Assembly: GCA_033442325.1 (NCBI GenBank) | Contig: JAWQFM010000002.1 | Location: 1,081,273-1,145,272 of the forward strand | Origin: Salpingoeca rosetta | Taxonomy: Eukaryota > Protista > Choanoflagellata | Direction of reading: 5' to 3' | Length of the DNA stretch: 64,000 nucleotides | Part shown: positions 33,663-46,863 of the stretch, in pieces | Position numbering within the stretch: position 1 is the first letter of the stretch | Layout: the number at the start of each line of letters is the position of its first letter | Notes under the pieces: generated by a model | What the model was told of the DNA's origin: nothing | Seen by the model: the letters and a program-made list of their open reading frames with translations, nothing else | Databases searched by the model: none | Program-made: the position numbers and the translations under genes

Positions 33663-34309
33663 CTAAAGCGAGCCCAACAAGTCCTCGTCGAGGTCAAGCG
33701 CGCCGACGTCTACAGGGACCTGCTGCGACCATTCAAACAGCTTGTCTTCATCATCATCCTCTTCATAGTAATCATCATAACCGTCCACACTGCCAAACCC
33801 GCCACTGGCATCAAACACATCCTCATCGCCACCACCCACGTCACCACGACGTCTCGCAACCCCTGCACCATCACCAGCACCATCACCACCACTATCATCG
33901 CGCCATGTGCTGTGAGGTGCCTCCACCATGGTCAGTGCACTTTCCTCGTTTGCCGGGCGGCTGTGCGACCATCGTCGCTCGCTCCCTGTTCCTGCACGCT
34001 GCTCCTGGGCAGATGCAAGAGCACTCCGTGCAACTACTTGCTGCTGTGATGGTTGCTGCTGTAATGCGGATGGTTGCTGCTGTAATGCAGGGGTTGCAGG
34101 TTTTCCTGTCATTGTCGATGACAGTGAGGCTGCAAGCTGTGGCGTCTGCTGCGTCTGCGGAGTGCCCACACCATATGCGCGGCGCAGCTGATTCATGCGC
34201 CGCGCTCTGCCGTGTGCAGACATGCGTCCCGTCTGCGTTCCCGTGCGTGTGCGCGTGAGGGCGCGGTGTGCTGTTGCCGCCCGCAACTTCGCCAGCTGTC
34301 ACACGGCGT

Positions 34310-34359
<50 letters not shown>

Positions 34360-36530
34360 CAAGCGTGAGAGATGGGCACAACTTTCTTCTTCTGATGCCA
34401 AAGGGGGAAGATAATGCGTTCTCAACACAACCCTCTCGTCACACCACGTCAGAGTACCTGGTCATCAATCAGCACCGTCGCATTGAGCTCTTGAGTTCTG
34501 TGTTTGCATGTGTGTGTGTGTGTGTGTTCGCATGTGTGTATGTTTGCATGTGCGTGTGCGTTGAGTGAGCGCAAAAAGATGATTGCGTGATGATGGTGAC
34601 GTGAACATGTGCACACGCACGCGAGAGAAGCCGCGAGCCACCTTGAGGCAACACATGAACAGCAACAACAGCAACAGACGATACAACGTACATCATCTTC
34701 AGTTCCGTGCGGCCGCCGCTTCTGACGTGTTCGATAAAGTCGTTCACCGTACTCGATGATGTTGTCGGCTCTGCAGGTTCAACACGCATGTGGTTGAGGG
34801 AACACGTGTGATGGAGGGTGGGCATACGCACATGGGTCACACAACACACACAACACACACAACACACACAATACAACACACATGCACGACAGAGAAGGAG
34901 TATGGAACGCAATGGGCGGCCGCAGCAGCTCGCCACCGCCACCACGACCGCCAATGGCAGCAGGTGAATACCACAGTACCGATGGTGTGGAGCGGGCGCC
35001 AGTCGTTTGATCGCCCACCAGACATGGCCGACTGCTTGTCCAGCGCAGTCATCACCTGACAAAACACACACACACACACATGCGCGCGCGTGTGCACCAT
35101 CGGATAACCAACAGAAGGTGAGTTGAGGGCTGGTAAAGACGTTTACAAGTGGCCGTCTTCGTGCAGCAAGACGCCACACACGAATCACCACGCTCACACG
35201 CATTCACAGAATCCCACACATGTGCACACACACACGCACGCAGTTACGTACACCCGCACGCACATATACACAAGTGTGTGCACCTGCACGTATTCTCGCT
35301 CGTCGCTGACGTCGATGAGATCGCTCATGCCACCGGAGTTGACGTGCAGATACCAGTCCTCAATCACTTGCTCCATGTACTTTCGTGGGCCCATCATACT
35401 CCGCGCATCCTCCGCCGCCTGGCAATCGCAAAAGTACAACGGCAGCGGTTGCTGATTGTCATGAAATTGATTGTCTGGAATGGCGACGAGCTCTTCTGTG
35501 TTGCGGCAAGCCACGTTTGCAGCACTCGTATATGCACCCACGCACACGCATACACACCACACACGCACACGCACACATGCACGCACAGATTCGCGCGCAC
35601 ATCCACATGCACGTACATACATCCCGTAGATGCACATGGCCAAACAATACCCTCTCCAGGTTGCAATAATGCACACGCACCTGAGTTGATGCGCGGAAGA
35701 GCTGGCGAGCGGACATGTACTGCACCTTTGTGCCACAAGGACTCAAATATATCTGCAACCGACAGCGTGGTTGAAATGGTGGGAGGACATGAGCACATAC
35801 GCACACGGTTGACATCCTAAAAACCAGCACAGCAAACTGCTTCGCGTGTGTCAAGGGAGTTGCAGAGCCAAAGGTGGAATCAGGAACAAGCAAGAAGTCC
35901 CTCCCATACGCACGCACACACGCACAAGCCGTCGCATAGACCACCTTGAAGAAGATTTGAGGGGGGTACTGGTCACCACCAAACCGAAAGCGTATGGTTG
36001 GCGAGAGTGTGGGGTCTAGAAGAAGCTCTGCTTCCGCAGGGCACAGGGTTCGAATAAAATCCACAGCATATGCCGTTTCCTGTTGTTTCATCCACGATAC
36101 CACGAATTGTACCATGAGCAAGCAGTGTGGCGTCATCACTCTAAGCTCCGGGTGCCAATGGCCAGTTGGCTGACCGACCGACAAGGGAACAACACACAAC
36201 ATACAACAACAACACAACGACACAGAACACGGCAACACAACACGGAACAACCCAAAACACAACAACACACAAAAAGGCAACACCACGTACCGCGGCCTTA
36301 ACGGCCAGCTTGAGCCGTTGAAATAGACGGCGCCATGCCACGCGCCGTACGGCACGTGTGATGATCGTGGCCGCAACGTGCTCCACGTGCCGCTGCTGCA
36401 TCTCCTCATCATCAGCTCCACCCACCGCAGTGCGGTGGTGCTGCTGTTGTGGGAAGCGTCTGGTGAACGTCGTTGTCATCGGCGTTGTTGTTGTGCAGCC
36501 AAGTCCGGACGATTCATGGAAGATATCCAT
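33663..36530 (-). CDS. CXorf58-like uncharacterized protein (C11orf65/MFI-related N-terminal domain, IQ-like helix)
   Basis: AATIITRAVRRVAWRRLFQRLK (IQ-like), LCPAEAELLLDP..IRFRFGGDQYPPQIFFKI, AAEDARSMMGPRKYMEQVIED, GGRSNDWRPL, acidic tail DKLFEWSQ. Start codon uncertain; apparent frame break near 34990. Confidence 0.7.
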
Positions 36531-40996: not shown

Positions 40997-41183
40997 ATGG
41001 CGCGGCTTGCTCGACGCTGTGGTGCGCTGTTTGCGGTGCTGCTGATGCTGTTGGTGGCGCTTGCCAGCAAGCATGCGCTTGTCTCCGCCGCCAGCAACAG
41101 CACGACGACCGCAATACCGACCACGACAACTACCACCACCACACCCATCGTCTGCCAAAGCGCATCTGAACAAGGTACACCGC

Positions 41184-41216
<33 letters not shown>

Positions 41217-42902
41217 CACAACACAACACAATCCTTTATTGGGCGCATGTATGTCGTGTCGCTGTGTCGTTGAGGTCGTTGAGTGCAGCTCGCCAGCCAT
41301 GTCAGTACCTCACACCGCTGTCTGTCCGTGTTTCGGCGTTGGATCTTGTGCTGTACCCTCAGCTTGTGCTCGAAAGGGAAGGATGCCATGCCGGAATGAT
41401 CCGAATGTGTGTGGCCCTTGCCTGCGAGACCATCCGTACGCTGCTCGTGGGGGCGATCCAACGCAGGACGGCAACTCCAACTGCACCTCACGTAAGCATG
41501 ATTGGCACACATACTCGTGCGCGTGCCTGCATGCACAAACACAAGCAAAGCCAAAAGCTGTGTAGCAATCTGCATCCCGTCCTTTCTGCGTTCAGCAAAC
41601 GGTTGAGCCCTGCAACGTGTATGTGTGGGGCAACGCTCGCTGCTTGCCTGTCTCACATGCGGCCCGTCCCGACTGCTGCTTCTTCCGTGCCTGCAGGCAT
41701 TGATCGGCCCAAAATCGCTACGGAGCAGGGTCACATTGTTGCAGACGCCCTGAGCGGCGACATCTTCCTGCGTTTCTTGAATGGCCAAGAACTCTCCGTG
41801 TCTTCGCTGGCAGCGCTTCACACGAACATGCAGGTACAGGCAAGAGGTGCTATCTGTCCCCTACTCGAACGTATGGCAGCTTCATACGTGTGCTCTCCTG
41901 CATGACACTCTTCTTGCATCGTTGCTCTCGCTCGCTTGTGAACATGCACCACCCCAACACCCTGTCTTGATTGCCTGTGCGTTTGCAGAACGAGCTGTCG
42001 CTGGCGCTGGATGACCTCAGGTGCGTTCTTGCGTTCTTGCGTTCTTGCATCTCCTGCGTGTGCTTGTCTCCATGTGACGTTCAAGGCCTGTTTCCTGATG
42101 CCATGTTGTTCTTAATGAATGTTTGGTGCAGGGGCGAGTTTGCCACGAAGCTGGCTGAGCTTGAGGCCCAGTACAAGGCTGAGATTCAATCTCTCAGAAT
42201 CGCCCTACAGCGCTCAAACAGGTGCCTTTGCTGTGTCGTGTGTTGTGTGTTGTGTGTGTTGTGTGTTGTGTGTTGTGTGTATGTGTATCTTGTGTGTCGT
42301 GTGTGTGTCGTGTGTACGGTTGCTTTTGTCGCCTTCGCAAGGATCGATACCTTTTCCTGGAGTTGTGGGTGTTATGTTACACAGCTTCCACACACTCACG
42401 CGCCGCAAACACCACTGCCCTTCTCTCCCACGTTAGTTCGCTGGAGTCTGAAATTGAAACACTCGACTCAAGCAAAGCAGATGTTGCGGACGTGCATCGC
42501 GTGGAGAGTAGCATCGAAAGTGTCCAAAGCAGCGTCATCAGCATTAACAGTGCGTGTAGCTTCCGACAGCTGATCTCCTCCCTCCCCCCTCACACTCGCG
42601 TGCCTGCATCTTTGTATCTCGATAGTGTTGGTTCAACCGATGTGGGTGCTTCGTACCTTCCTATCCCTTCGTGTGTTCGCTTTCCCCCTCCCACTCTCCT
42701 CCTCCACTGCACACCGCTCACCCGTTGTCACTGTTCCGTGATTAGGTGCGCTGAACAACAAGGTTGATCTTGAAGGCCAGGCCTCGCTTGAAACAGCGCT
42801 GCGCTCCGACATCTCCATCGTTGCCTCAGATGGGCAGGACACCGCAAATGCTCTTGAGTGCGTATGCACGTGTGTGCATGTGTGCGTGCATGTGCATGTG
42901 CA

Positions 42903-42993
<91 letters not shown>

Positions 42994-45175
42994 TAAAGAG
43001 GAGGGGGGTTTTTCTTCACTCGTGCTGTGCGTATTTGCCGTGTGCAAACGCACCGTTACATGGCGTGTTGCTTGTTCTTTATGCAGCGCTGATGCTCACG
43101 ATCCACGCCAACAACAAACATATGCTGCTCCGGCAGGGGTTTGTTGGAGACAGCCGCGCGGGTCACGGATGTTGAGGCATCATTCGAGGAGTTGCGAATG
43201 GACATTTCGGAAGTATCGACAGCGGAGCGTGAGTTGCTGCTCGTATACTCGAGAGGGTTCCCCTTTCGCATGTTTCGGGAACTTCTGTTCCTCCACGCTG
43301 CTTTTTGTGTTGATCATGTTCTGCGATCAATCATGACCCGTGCATTACGTCCCCTTGCTTGCAGGCAACACGGCGTCGCTCTTTGATGGACTCATCGTCA
43401 AGATTTCGGTGTGCATGTGTGTGTGTGTGTGTCTGTGTGTGTGTGTGTGTCTGTCTGTCTCTCTGTCTGTCTGTCTCTCTCTATCTGTGTGTGTGTGTGT
43501 GTGTGTGTGGAGTTGACAGGTGTGGGCGTGCGCTGTATGTGCTTGAATGACGACGACGCAAACCACGAAAGTTGGTCTCCAATGTGCTCCTCGCTCACAC
43601 GGTCTGGTGTGGCTGCTGTTGCCCGTTTTCCTCGTGCACTATTCTTTGCTTGCAGGCACAGAGCTCTGGGCTTTGCAGTGGCTCGGCGCGACGCTTGTGG
43701 ATCAACGACGAGGTGCACATTGCTGCTCCCTTCAAGCGAATCATTCACACACACGTGCACGCGCGCCATCTCGCCATACTCTGTTCCTCCCCTACTTGCA
43801 CTCACTCACACGCTCACTCACTCATACACACACACTCACTCTCTCACTTACTCACACACACTCTCACTCACTCACTCACTCACTCACTCACTCACTCACT
43901 CACTCACTCACTTACTCACACACACTCTCACTCACTCACACACATACACATATCCACACACACACATACCATCTCTCTCTCTCGCGCACGCGCGCCCACA
44001 CAGCCTTACACCTGGACGTCGTCTTGGAGCCGTGGCATCAACACCGTGGAGTTCCACCCAACGACCATGCAAGTCGTGCGTGAGCAGAACTTTGACACTT
44101 GCTGTGGATCCTCCCCAGCAACGGAAGGTGTGATGTGATCGAGGTGTTTTGCGTCTCGTGTTGCTGTCGACTTGTGCTTTTTCCCTCGTGTTCAACCTGT
44201 ATTTGTCGCGTTGGCGTGGTACATGCTTTCCACGCATGCTTTCCACGCGCTCATGCGTTGTCCTGCTTTTTCACACCAAAATGGCGCAGCTGATCGCCTC
44301 ACACAGTACATCAACGGCCTGGCGGAGGGCGTGCCAGTCGTGTTTGTGATCCACGATGAAGGTAAGCCCGAGAGTGGGGGACCTGTTGCTCCTGGTGTTA
44401 CACAATGGACGTTGTGGTTGGATAGTAGAAGCTTCGGTCTCTGTCGTAGTGTCATGTCGCTTGATGACATACCCTCACGCCCTAGCTCACGCGATGGGGT
44501 GGCATTCTTGCCTTTGTAATGCCATTTTGCCGTGCCTGCAGGTATCAGCGCTGCCGATGACGAGCTGAAGTCAGCCATCGAGAGCATGGGCAGCCGGTAC
44601 ATCCGTACCATCACCTACAGAGGTGCGCTTTGCTTGTATGCCTTTGAGGGACAGGCAAGCTGCAAGGGCTGATCAGGATGTATTTGGTTGTGCATGCTCG
44701 ACACTGCCTGCACACATGGCTGTGCATGCGTACCTGCCTATTCACACACGCACACATGCACACACGCGCACGCCGCACATGCATCTGCCTTGAAGAGTCG
44801 TGGGCCATGATTGGAATCAAGGGGGCGTTTCCCGGCACTGTTCCGGAGGCGTACGGCTCCAAAGTGGACGACCCCGGATGCACACGTGATCCACCTGTCC
44901 AGGACGAAACAGCAATCATTTCGCAGTTGTTCTTTGCTGGCAAGCTCGCTCCTTTCAACCAAGAGCTTGCACGTCGCTCGTACGCCAATGTATGTGTGTG
45001 TGTGTGTGTCCCTTTTGGGCATGGACGCGTGCTACTGGGATTGACTGTCATTGCTCATCTGTCGTGCATTTCGTTGTGCCCACTCTGCTCGCGCGTCCGT
45101 CATGCTCGCACTTTCGTGTTCCGGCTGTGCTGAACACACTTGCACTCACGCATGCAATCGCACCCACCCACCCAC

Positions 45176-45253
<78 letters not shown>

Positions 45254-45969
45254 GGATGCAACAACCGTTCTTCACACACGCACAACAAATGCGCGCACAC
45301 TCGCACACACACACACAATTACACACACGCGCTTGCATGGTGCTCGCGCTCGCGTGCCGCCAGGGCCTGGAACGCTTCCGCAAGCGTTCGTCGTCGACGT
45401 GGGATGCGATGGTGTGGGGCGGGTACATCAGCGGAGACGTGGCGGGTATTGCTGAGCTTGGGACTATTCCAAGGACCTCCAATTACCAGCGATACATTGA
45501 CATCAAAGGTATGAAGGCACGGGGTTTGTGTTTTCGTGTTTCCGGACTTGGGCACCGTGATGGCCCACTTATCTCTCGTGTGCTCTGCTTGGTTCCTCTC
45601 CACACGGGATGTGTGCGTGTCAGGTATTATTGATGTGTGAGCATTTCTTCCAGAGTGTCACGCTCCTCCTCGTGCTTGCCTGCAGTGTACGGCTCCCATC
45701 GCGGCTACAACGTCAACAGCTACTTCGAGTTCAAGCACTATGTCATCATGTGCGGCGACAAGTGCTCTGCCGCCCTCATTGACGCAGCAGGTCTCTGCAA
45801 CAAAACCTGTTTTCTTTTTGTTGTCGTTCCTCGACATTGGGCGGGATGGGGAAGGGCGATTGACACACGATGTTCCGCAGGCCTTTGGTGTTCTTTGCAT
45901 TGTTCACACGCGGTACATGCAACACGCGCTCACGCACAAACACACGCGTCCACGCATGCTTGCGATTGC

Positions 45970-46043
<74 letters not shown>

Positions 46044-46863
46044 ACTACAGGTCGAGGTACGGTGAGCCTCTACGACACGATCCATCACGACTCCAACACA
46101 TATGCAGGTGAGGGATACCTCTCAACATGCGCATGTGTGCGTGTGCGTGCGTGTGTGTTTGTCTTGTGTACACGCCGTATTGTGTCTCATTTCTTCCCTT
46201 TTCAGCGTGCTGTGTGAAGCGCCGTCCTTGCTCGTTGCTCCTGTGATTCTCATTTTGCTGTTCCTCTGTTCATGCGTTGCGACCTTCGACTGGATGCTGC
46301 TTCTCAGGCAATGGTGACATTGACATCCCCCCAGAGGGTTTTGTGATTGCGCTCCGATTTACACCCGTCATTGGCGCCAACTTTGACTGTGAGCTGCGTG
46401 TGTGTGTGCGTGTGTGTCCGGGTTTGTTGCTGTTGGTCTGGGAGCGTGCGAAGTGTGTTTTGGGTGTTGGCAGTGTCCATGCGCTCCGAAAGTGCCCTTC
46501 GAGTGCAACCAAGGCTGCGTTGTCCGCATCGCTTCTGTTTTGCTCTTGCACACACACACTCACACACTCACACTCTCTCCCACTCACACACACTCACACA
46601 CTCACACACACGCACACGCACGCACACACACGCACGCACACACACGCACGCTCATCCTCACACACTCACACACACGCCTCTGTGTTGCGTGTATCGTGCT
46701 TGCTTGCTTGTTGGCATCGCTTGCAGACACGGTTGTGGTGAATTACTATGACTTTGACGAGTTCCACCCAAGCTTCGTTCCATCAGACCATCGCTGCTTC
46801 GACATGAGAGGCAATGCCGGCTATTCCTACCCATACGTCTCCTTCAAGTGCCGCGATGTTTGA
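40997..46863 (+). CDS. Secreted multidomain protein: signal peptide, Thr stalk, Cys-rich module, cubilin-NTD-like segment, coiled coil, ILEI/PANDER (GG-type lectin) domain, unknown C-terminal domain
   Basis: About 19 short exons splice in phase. ILEI signature across exons ~43656-44830: ISAQSSGLCSG..WINDE..RGINTVEFHPTT..NFDT..YINGLAEGVPVVFVIHDE..AIESMGSRYIRTITYRESWAMIGIKG. Heptad-like segment ~41989-43230. No TM helix after the signal peptide. Confidence 0.8.

What the first reader, a model, noticed from the sequence alone, without database searches (positions are those of the whole stretch)
40997..46863. Novel secreted mosaic: Cys module + cubilin-like trimerization head + coiled coil + ILEI lectin-type domain
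Seen: signal peptide; Thr stalk; CARKGRMPCRNDPNVCGPCL..GNSNC (41363-41491); DRPKIATEQGHIVADALSGDIFLRF (41697-41833); ~170 aa of coiled coil; a clear ILEI/PANDER domain; and a further domain. Known: cubilin starts QPRMATERGNLVF, a three-chain beta-helix followed by a trimeric coiled coil that docks on amnionless; CxxxxRxxC..CGPCL resembles the NPDC1 Cys module; ILEI/GG domains (FAM3, POMGnT1 stem, TMEM2) can bind glycans. Inference: a trimeric collectin-like stalked lectin, possibly for prey capture, extracellular matrix or colony adhesion. I do not recognise this domain combination.
Basis: partly seen in the sequence, partly recalled or inferred. Interest (0 to 1): 0.78.

Follow-up and report, generated by a model that had tools for sequence, protein, structure and literature searches.

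The report
Secreted stalked ILEI lectin-like protein
This is a real 19-exon choanoflagellate gene (Salpingoeca rosetta PTSG_01220) for a secreted protein that carries a sugar-binding-type ILEI domain and an unknown end domain on a long coiled-coil stalk; the proposed kinship of its small "head" with animal cubilin got no support from any test I could run.

Summary
The 19 GT-AG exons at 40997-46863 (+) splice into a 659-aa ORF identical to the public model PTSG_01220 of Salpingoeca rosetta.

**Order of parts:**
- signal peptide
- short Thr tract
- 6-Cys module
- a 33-aa strand-rich segment
- about 165 aa of heptad repeats
- a full ILEI/FAM3 domain (Pfam 79.6 bits)
- a 170-aa orphan beta-rich domain with 4 Cys

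An ortholog in Hartaetosiga gracilis keeps the same order in one transcript.

**New support for a lectin reading:** the three residues that bind GlcNAc in the POMGnT1 stem domain are kept in both species (R338, D392, R420).

**Not supported:**
- Cubilin-like head: no sequence, profile or fold match to cubilin. No convincing amnionless was found by an exon-wise Pfam search.
- NPDC1-like Cys module: no Pfam hit.

Trimer formation could not be tested, because only monomer modelling was available.

This scan has flagged "cubilin-N-like" modules on other S. rosetta DNA before. I confirmed a family of about 150 copies, but its profile does not detect this head.

**Verdict:** a new domain architecture of a known superfamily, of moderate interest.

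The parts
40997..46863 (+). Whole gene PTSG_01220: 19 exons, 659 codons plus stop
   Evidence: Exons: 40997-41174, 41363-41491, 41697-41833, 41989-42020, 42132-42221, 42437-42549, 42746-42857, 43137-43228, 43365-43408, 43656-43712, 44004-44127, 44290-44361, 44542-44622, 44796-44989, 45364-45508, 45686-45790, 46051-46107, 46308-46388, 46727-46863. All are GT-AG. The translation is identical to P0001. 17 exons were re-found by search of the own genome.
40997..41174 (+). Exon 1: signal peptide (residues 1 to about 23-31), N-glycosylation sequon N34, Thr tract 36-48, first Cys (C53)
   Evidence: The only strongly hydrophobic 19-mer in the protein is here (Kyte-Doolittle 2.27). Small residues sit at -3/-1 (ALA|S or VSA|A), read directly from the sequence.
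41363..41491 (+). Exon 2: Cys module (C61, C69, C76, C79, C100), sequon N99
   Evidence: Translation. No Pfam, PDB or own-genome relative. The ending D-x-N-x-N-C is kept in H. gracilis.
41697..41833 (+). Exon 3: strand-rich 'head' (residues 104-136) plus the first helical turns (137-148)
   Evidence: AF2 with an 8-row alignment gives pLDDT 87.7, four short strands then a helix. Identity to the ortholog is 28%. There is no detectable relative.
41989..43408 (+). Exons 4-9: heptad-repeat stalk (with the end of exon 3: residues 137-303)
   Evidence: Heptad score z = 3.6 against shuffles. The a/d hydrophobic pattern is conserved in the ortholog (p = 7e-12). The low-confidence AF2 model is helical over 137-300. 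The ortholog carries a 7-residue indel at the start of the coil.
43656..44989 (+). Exons 10-14: ILEI/FAM3 (GG) domain, about residues 304-470 (Pfam core 338-431), Cys 316, 361, 362, 449
   Evidence: PF15711 at 79.6 bits, E = 2.6e-22. Exons 11, 12 and 13 hit profile positions 1-24, 31-52 and 57-79. PDB relatives are the POMGnT1 stem, FAM3A/B/C and TMEM2.
44031..44033 (+). Codon of R338, counterpart of POMGnT1 Arg129
   Evidence: Alignment to 5ggj_A. The spacing R..+50..D..+28..R fits Arg129/Asp179/Arg207, named as the GlcNAc-binding residues in PMC9802357. Invariant in H. gracilis.
44355..44357 (+). Codon of D392, counterpart of POMGnT1 Asp179
   Evidence: Same basis as for R338.
44619..44621 (+). 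Codon of R420, counterpart of POMGnT1 Arg207
   Evidence: Same basis as for R338.
45364..46863 (+). Exons 15-19: orphan C-terminal beta-rich domain (residues about 486-659), Cys 556, 560, 638, 656
   Evidence: 54% identity to H. gracilis, with long invariant blocks. No Pfam, NCBIfam or PDB hit. No paralog in the genome. Nine strands appear in the low-confidence models.

Best explanation
PTSG_01220 encodes a soluble secreted glycoprotein built like a stalked lectin.

Proposed working:
- After signal-peptide removal, a short O-glycosylated Thr tract and a 6-Cys module sit at the N-terminus.
- A small strand-rich cap leads straight into about 165 residues (roughly 24 nm) of parallel coiled coil that bundles two or more chains. 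Three is my preferred number, but it is unproven.
- Each chain ends in an ILEI/FAM3-type domain with an intact GlcNAc-binding triad, followed by a disulfide-bonded beta-rich domain of unknown fold.
- Bundling makes several weak glycan-binding heads act together. The likely targets are glycans of the cell coat, matrix or theca, or of bacterial prey.

Shown: the gene model, the secretion signal with no membrane anchor, the conserved heptads, ILEI membership, triad conservation, and an ortholog with the same order of parts.

Inferred: oligomerisation and chain number, sugar binding, and the biological target.

The strand-rich cap is best treated as a lineage-specific oligomerisation or capping element, not as a demonstrated cubilin homolog.
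For: - The model is identical to the public protein.
- There is a single hydrophobic segment, at the N-terminus.
- Heptads are significant and their core pattern is conserved at only 27% identity.
- Beta-branched V/I/T occupy 8 of 21 d positions. Established coiled-coil rules (Harbury 1993) count this against parallel dimers.
- ILEI scores 79.6 bits, with PDB relatives the POMGnT1 stem, FAM3A/B/C and TMEM2.
- R338/D392/R420 align with POMGnT1 Arg129/Asp179/Arg207. PMC9802357 reports that these residues bind beta-GlcNAc, and that FAM3C, FAM3A and a nematode FAM3-like domain carrying them bind GlcNAc resin.
- All 8 Cys of the two C-terminal domains are invariant in the ortholog, as expected for extracellular disulfides.
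- The globular domains are far better conserved (46-54%) than the head and stalk (27-28%). This fits structural spacers carrying functional heads.
Against: - No experiment or multimer model shows oligomerisation.
- The stalk has Gly-containing breaks (around 198-204, 233-237, 253-258, 271-276) and could fold back on itself.
- The triad is conserved across the whole ILEI superfamily, including FAM3 cytokine-like proteins whose physiological ligands are unknown, so its presence does not prove lectin function.
- Both AF2 and ESM models of the full protein are of low confidence.
- Only two species are known to carry the gene, so conservation statistics are thin.
Confidence: 0.55

Rival explanations
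1. The head is a true counterpart of the cubilin N-terminus. Three chains would intertwine into a beta-helix capped end-on by an amnionless-like membrane protein, making this a lectin-armed subunit of a pre-animal cubam-like uptake receptor.
For: - The position is the same as in cubilin, short strands directly before a coiled coil (PMC6283879).
- Gly-punctuated 9-residue strand units are read from the sequence (G114, G123, G132).
- From recall only, not from a tool: the first 11 residues (P-K-I-A-T-E-Q-G-H-I-V) resemble cubilin 42-52. My recalled numbering fits Met44, Pro103 and Asn105 as named.
- Earlier notes of this scan report amnionless-like genes elsewhere in this genome.
Against: - No cubilin hit at E <= 10 in the PDB with three different queries.
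- None at E <= 1e-3 in 1.84 billion representative proteins.
- No cubilin among Foldseek or VIA matches of a pLDDT-88 head model.
- The motif is only loosely kept in H. gracilis, where the head is 28% identical.
- The PF14828 hit is low-complexity.
- No EGF or CUB domains and no candidate anchor among the neighbours.
Confidence: 0.08
2. The head is a very diverged copy of the roughly 150-copy S. rosetta 'strands-then-coil' N-terminal module that carries swappable heads (propellers, L-domains). This gene would be one more head swap within that family.
For: - The motif F-L-N-G-x-[DE]-[LV] lies at the strand-to-coil junction, with a Gly 15 residues upstream, as in the family members L042, L043, L044, L046, L055 and L059.
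- The layout is the same: signal peptide, (Cys/Ser-Thr region), module, coil, head. It is closest to the C36 L-domain protein.
- AF2 with that family as the alignment folds the exon confidently.
Against: - I found the members with a DNA pattern derived from this very head, so the shared motif is there by construction.
- An HMM of the 7 members gives no alignment to the head.
- hhalign probability is 0.4%.
- The family profile finds 153 places in the genome, and this locus is not among the 150 listed (E up to 0.0014).
- The head exon alone finds no paralog.
Confidence: 0.15
3. The ILEI domain acts as a FAM3-like secreted signalling factor (cytokine-like) rather than as a lectin. The coiled coil would only dimerise it or tether it.
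For: The closest characterised relatives include FAM3A/B/C, which are described as secreted signalling proteins (PMC9802357).
Against: - The same paper shows FAM3C and FAM3A bind carbohydrate through the shared triad.
- A 24-nm stalk and an extra C-terminal domain are not features of FAM3 proteins.
- No receptor is known in choanoflagellates.
Confidence: 0.12
4. The helical region is not an extended intermolecular stalk. It would be an intramolecular helical bundle, and the protein a compact monomer.
For: The low-confidence model breaks the region into five helices of 12-60 residues. The heptad register shifts at about five points.
Against: The first helix alone is about 60 residues. The a/d core is conserved along the whole 165 residues. 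A 7-residue indel preserves the register.
Confidence: 0.1

Closest known systems
ILEI/FAM3 superfamily (PF15711): FAM3A-D, POMGnT1 stem domain, GG domain of CEMIP/TMEM2, nematode FAMP-1
   Same: A full-length domain match at 79.6 bits. The GlcNAc-binding Arg/Asp/Arg triad is present. It is a secreted or luminal, disulfide-bonded domain.
   Different: The known members I saw are stand-alone (FAM3), fused to a glycosyltransferase (POMGnT1, FAMP-1), or set within G8/PbH1 hyaluronidases (TMEM2). Here the domain sits on a long coiled coil and is followed by an orphan beta domain. I found no other protein with this combination, but my searches were limited.
Collectins and other stalk-and-head proteins of animals (MBL, SP-D; also olfactomedins, angiopoietins, emilins, CTHRC1)
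   Same: The layout: an N-terminal Cys-rich region, a long oligomerising stalk and C-terminal recognition domains. Multivalency is the presumed logic.
   Different: No collagen repeats, C-type lectin, C1q, fibrinogen or olfactomedin domain is present. It is an analogy of design, not membership.
Cubilin N-terminal region (residues 36-135; PDB structure with amnionless, PMC6283879)
   Same: Short beta strands immediately before a coiled coil in a secreted protein.
   Different: No detectable sequence, profile or fold similarity with the tools here. No EGF or CUB domains. No convincing amnionless was found by an exon-wise Pfam search. The head does not start the mature chain; it follows a Thr tract and a Cys module.
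S. rosetta family of about 150 N-terminal strands-then-coil modules (mostly intronless secreted propeller genes; confirmed)
   Same: A secreted protein with the order module, coil, head, and the F-L-N-G-x-[DE]-[LV] junction motif.
   Different: The family profile does not detect this head. This gene has 19 exons, while most family members sit in single open frames of 400-600 aa.

Membership tests
ILEI/FAM3 (Pfam PF15711) | Profile match above the curated gathering score over the whole domain | tested here: met
   79.6 bits against a cut-off of 27, profile positions 1-90 of 90, residues 338-431. The ortholog scores 68.9 bits. The exon-wise hits are colinear.
ILEI/FAM3 (Pfam PF15711) | Sequence relatives with the solved FAM3 / POMGnT1-stem fold | tested here: met
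   POMGnT1 stem E = 1.6e-7, FAM3B 7e-7, FAM3C 6e-6, TMEM2 2e-5, FAM3A 7.5e-5. The fold itself was not confirmed, because the model was of low confidence.
ILEI/FAM3 as glycan binder (POMGnT1-stem type) | Arg129/Asp179/Arg207 triad that contacts beta-GlcNAc | tested here: met
   R338, D392 and R420 align with the triad and have the same 50- and 28-residue spacing. The residues are named in PMC9802357. They are invariant in H. gracilis. Binding itself is not testable here.
Cubilin N-terminal trimerisation region | Sequence or profile similarity to cubilin residues 26-135 | tested here: not met
   No PDB hit at E <= 10 with the head exon, the two-species profile or the family profile. No cubilin at E <= 1e-3 in 1.84 billion representative proteins.
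Cubilin N-terminal trimerisation region | Three chains intertwined in a three-turn beta-helix | not testable with these tools
   Only monomer AF2 was available. The monomer model is a four-strand meander plus helix. Its best matches are propeller blades at Z <= 4.2, with no cubilin listed.
Cubilin N-terminal trimerisation region | Coiled coil directly after the strands | tested here: met
   Heptads run from residue 137.
Cubam system | An amnionless partner (PF14828) and EGF/CUB ligand-binding domains | tested here: not met
   The only PF14828 hit (20.3 bits, below the cut-off) is translated microsatellite. P0001 has no EGF or CUB domain. The neighbours are HECT, PH, LYR and HEAT genes plus one unknown. 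Exon-wise detection of a diverged amnionless is weak, so absence is not proven.
NPDC1 (Pfam PF06809) Cys module | Profile match to the NPDC1 family | tested here: not met
   No NPDC1 hit at E <= 10 for exon 2 or for the whole protein. HMMER filters drop very weak matches, so only a strong likeness is excluded.
S. rosetta ~150-copy strands-then-coil module | Detection by a profile built from members other than this gene | tested here: not met
   hmmsearch with filters off gives no alignment in residues 104-148. hhalign probability is 0.4%. The genome-wide search lists 150 places without this locus.
Collectins | Collagen Gly-X-Y stalk and C-type lectin domain | tested here: not met
   No Collagen or Lectin_C hit in Pfam. 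The likeness is of layout only.

The most novel reading that the evidence does not exclude
The strand-rich cap is an ancient, highly diverged relative or analogue of the cubilin three-chain beta-helix. It would plug into an amnionless-like membrane anchor encoded elsewhere in the genome. PTSG_01220 would then be a glycan-reading capture arm of a pre-animal cubam-type endocytic receptor, used for example for prey or nutrient uptake.
Probability: 0.07. Interest if true: 0.8.

Novelty: new variant of a known kind. Interest (0 to 1): 0.36.

Why it matters
Choanoflagellates are the closest living relatives of animals. How they built secreted recognition and matrix proteins bears on the origin of animal cell adhesion and innate recognition.

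This gene shows an ILEI/FAM3 domain with its sugar-binding residues intact, mounted on a coiled-coil stalk. That is the design principle of animal collectins and other stalk-and-head proteins, built here from different parts.

- It gives a concrete, testable candidate for a pre-animal multivalent lectin.
- Its conserved orphan C-terminal domain is worth a structure.
- It does not by itself add evidence for a pre-animal cubam receptor.

Tried and rejected
1. Paralog searches in the own genome with the head exon, Cys exon, a C-terminal exon and the whole protein found only the gene itself. The one weak Cys-exon hit is intron junk.
2. phmmer of the head exon against 1.84 billion representatives returned only three bacterial repeat proteins besides the gene itself. 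I read these as repeat-driven chance matches.
3. The full-length and profile word searches were swamped by low-complexity words. The search with alignment A1 did not even return the known ortholog.
4. AF2 of the whole protein with a 2-row alignment gave pLDDT 39.6 and I did not use it for fold search. The ESM Atlas structural neighbours of the C-terminal domain (TM about 0.5, assorted beta sandwiches) rest on a model of pLDDT 0.5. They are only a hint of a beta-sandwich.
5. The Atlas feature search for the head scored below 0.9, which is uninformative.
6. The metagenome scan found no relative.
7. The amnionless Pfam hit was rejected as translated microsatellite.
8. NCBIfam gave only coiled-coil noise.
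9. Papers: nothing on PTSG_01220, on FAM3 in choanoflagellates, or on cubilin in Salpingoeca.
Full report
**What is there**

The window is eukaryotic, with short exons and (CA)n-rich introns. It lies in a 55.4-Mb assembly, and the protein record later returned names it Salpingoeca rosetta.

- From the three forward frames and the DNA I built a 19-exon model, all GT-AG and phase-consistent, giving 659 codons plus a stop.
- I searched the exons one by one by reference. I handed no self-joined sequence to any search tool.
- A phmmer search of exon 3 against 1.84 billion representative proteins returned a 659-aa protein, P0001. A script showed it to be identical to my model.
- P0001 is PTSG_01220 (XP_004997193.1, EGD80632.1, UniProt F2U158). 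It is named "hypothetical protein" or "ILEI/PANDER domain-containing protein". All later full-length work used that database record.

**Anatomy**

| Part | Residues | Evidence |
|---|---|---|
| Signal peptide | 1 to about 23-31 | Only hydrophobic segment; no later TM and no hydrophobic C-terminus, so a soluble secreted product |
| Thr tract | 36-48 | Sequon at N34 |
| Cys module | 53-100 | Six Cys; sequon at N99 |
| Strand-rich segment | 104-136 | Four short strands |
| Heptad stalk | 137-303 | See below |
| ILEI domain | Pfam core 338-431, probably about 304-470 | E = 2.6e-22 |
| C-terminal domain | about 486-659 | Four Cys, beta-rich |

- The heptad score exceeds all 300 shuffles (z = 3.6).
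- In the ortholog, hydrophobic residues fill 37 of 46 a/d columns against 25 of 115 other columns (p = 7e-12).

**Ortholog**

- A region search with residues 486-659 found P0005 of Hartaetosiga gracilis. A sister isoform, P0007, retains an intron.
- Overall identity is 42%: head 28%, coil 27%, ILEI 46-51%, C-terminal domain 54%.
- All eight Cys of the two C-terminal domains are invariant.
- The transcript runs from the last residues of the Cys module to the stop. Head, stalk, ILEI and end domain therefore lie on one mRNA.
- P0007's retained intron lies at the S. rosetta exon 15/16 junction, so that intron position is shared.
- A 7-residue insertion at the start of the coil keeps the heptad register.

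**The ILEI domain as a sugar binder**

- A profile of the two species hits the POMGnT1 stem domain, FAM3B, FAM3C, TMEM2 and FAM3A in the PDB.
- In the printed alignment, R338, D392 and R420 face three POMGnT1 residues spaced 50 and 28 apart. That is exactly the spacing of Arg129, Asp179 and Arg207.
- PMC9802357 states that these three directly bind beta-linked GlcNAc. It also reports that FAM3C, FAM3A and a nematode FAM3-like domain with the triad bind GlcNAc resin, while a domain lacking two of them does not.
- The triad is invariant in H. gracilis.
- This is the best functional clue, though the triad is common to the whole superfamily.

**The cubilin claim**

Cubilin residues 36-135 form a three-chain beta-helix followed by a coiled coil (PMC6283879).

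| Test | Result |
|---|---|
| Head exon against all PDB chains | No hit at E <= 10 |
| Two-species profile against the PDB | ILEI relatives and coiled-coil noise only |
| Head exon against 1.84 billion proteins | No cubilin |
| AF2 of the exon with an 8-row alignment | pLDDT 87.7; four short strands and a helix |
| Foldseek on that model | Nothing below E = 0.49 |
| VIA-align against 48,161 chains | Top Z 4.2, on propeller blades; no cubilin |
| PF14828 (Amnionless) in the genome | One sub-threshold hit that is translated microsatellite |
| Gene neighbours | HECT, PH, LYR and HEAT genes plus one unknown 469-aa gene |

- I could not obtain a cubilin sequence from any tool, so the direct pairwise alignment was left out.
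- From recall only, the first 11 residues of the head resemble cubilin 42-52. My recalled numbering fits Met44, Pro103 and Asn105 named. Such an 11-residue likeness would not be significant in a database search, and it is only loosely kept in H. gracilis.
- Trimer formation was not testable, because modelling here is monomer-only.

**Relation to earlier findings of this scan**

- Notes from other parts of this genome report a "cubilin-N-like" module at the start of about 139-150 genes, with kinship to cubilin not demonstrated.
- Following the L-domain lead, I found such a module in a secreted L-domain protein on contig C36.
- A DNA pattern for F-[LF]-[ND]-G-x-[DE]-[LV] then found six more, in intronless secreted propeller genes.
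- A profile of these seven finds 153 places in the genome, mostly in open frames of 400-600 aa and many on contigs C4 and C25. So the family is real.
- This locus is not among the 150 places listed.
- The profile gives no alignment to the head even with filters off.
- hhalign gives 0.4% probability.
- The shared junction motif is there by construction of my pattern.
- The family profile does not hit cubilin in the PDB either.
- I therefore file the head as an unassigned strand-rich cap. It is possibly a very diverged family member (15%).

**Other claims**

- The NPDC1 likeness of the Cys module has no Pfam support, and the module has no paralog.
- The C-terminal domain has no Pfam, NCBIfam, PDB or own-genome relative.
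- Low-confidence models suggest about nine strands, possibly a beta-sandwich.

**Mechanism and verdict**

Most likely this is a secreted, glycosylated, coiled-coil oligomer presenting several ILEI heads plus orphan-domain heads. In other words, it is a multivalent lectin-like protein of the cell coat or matrix, or one used for prey capture.

| Claim | My estimate |
|---|---|
| Oligomerisation through the stalk | About 85% |
| Three chains | About 45% (valine and other beta-branched residues are frequent at d positions) |
| Glycan binding | About 50% |

It is a new domain architecture within a known superfamily, already present in databases as an unnamed ILEI protein. The cubilin and NPDC1 readings are unsupported. 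Interest is moderate.

Noticed in passing
G000 genome-wide; e.g. C4:1745322-1745501, C4:1629813-1629989, C31:141465-141641, C36:100832-101020 (loci L042-L046, L055, L059, L061): A family of about 150 short 'strands then Q-rich coil' modules sits just after signal peptides. Most are in intronless open frames of 400-600 aa that encode secreted propeller proteins, and they are strongly concentrated on contigs C4 and C25. The scan noted this before on other DNA; I confirmed it independently.
   Followed up: partly
L029:1458-3221 (G000:C36, + strand): A secreted L-domain (Recep_L_domain) protein with the same overall order as the studied gene: signal peptide, Cys-rich module, poly-Ser tract, strand module, short coil, then the binding domain.
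   Followed up: partly
G000:C21:810734-811042 (L006, L008): A second ILEI-domain gene in the genome (42 bits summed over two exons). It has a Thr-rich stretch upstream. Its architecture was not worked out.
   Followed up: no
window 41186-41215, 42905-42992, 43800-43975, 45176-45250, 45965-46042, 46555-46680: Nearly every intron of this gene carries (CA)n/(GT)n or CACT-type microsatellites. These produce long spurious Cys-Val or Thr-His open frames in the ORF list.
   Followed up: no
P0007 (Hartaetosiga gracilis isoform): A transcript isoform keeps an in-frame 37-codon intron exactly where S. rosetta has its exon 15/16 junction. The intron position is therefore conserved between two choanoflagellate genera.
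   Followed up: partly
L009 (G000:C4:286018-289389): The only Amnionless (PF14828) hit in the genome is a run of translated trinucleotide repeats (poly-Cys / poly-Asn frames). It lies inside what looks like an aldehyde dehydrogenase gene, so it is a false positive.
   Followed up: yes
L036, L040, L049 (G000:C2:310574, C2:1828884, C7:1591651): Three loci with near-identical Hsp70-type sequence (…DFFNGKDLNKSINPDEAV…) turned up in the pattern search. They are multiple Hsp70 copies.
   Followed up: no
window 33663-36530, minus strand: A called 469-aa gene with no Pfam hit lies two genes upstream of the studied gene. I did not examine it as a possible partner.
   Followed up: no
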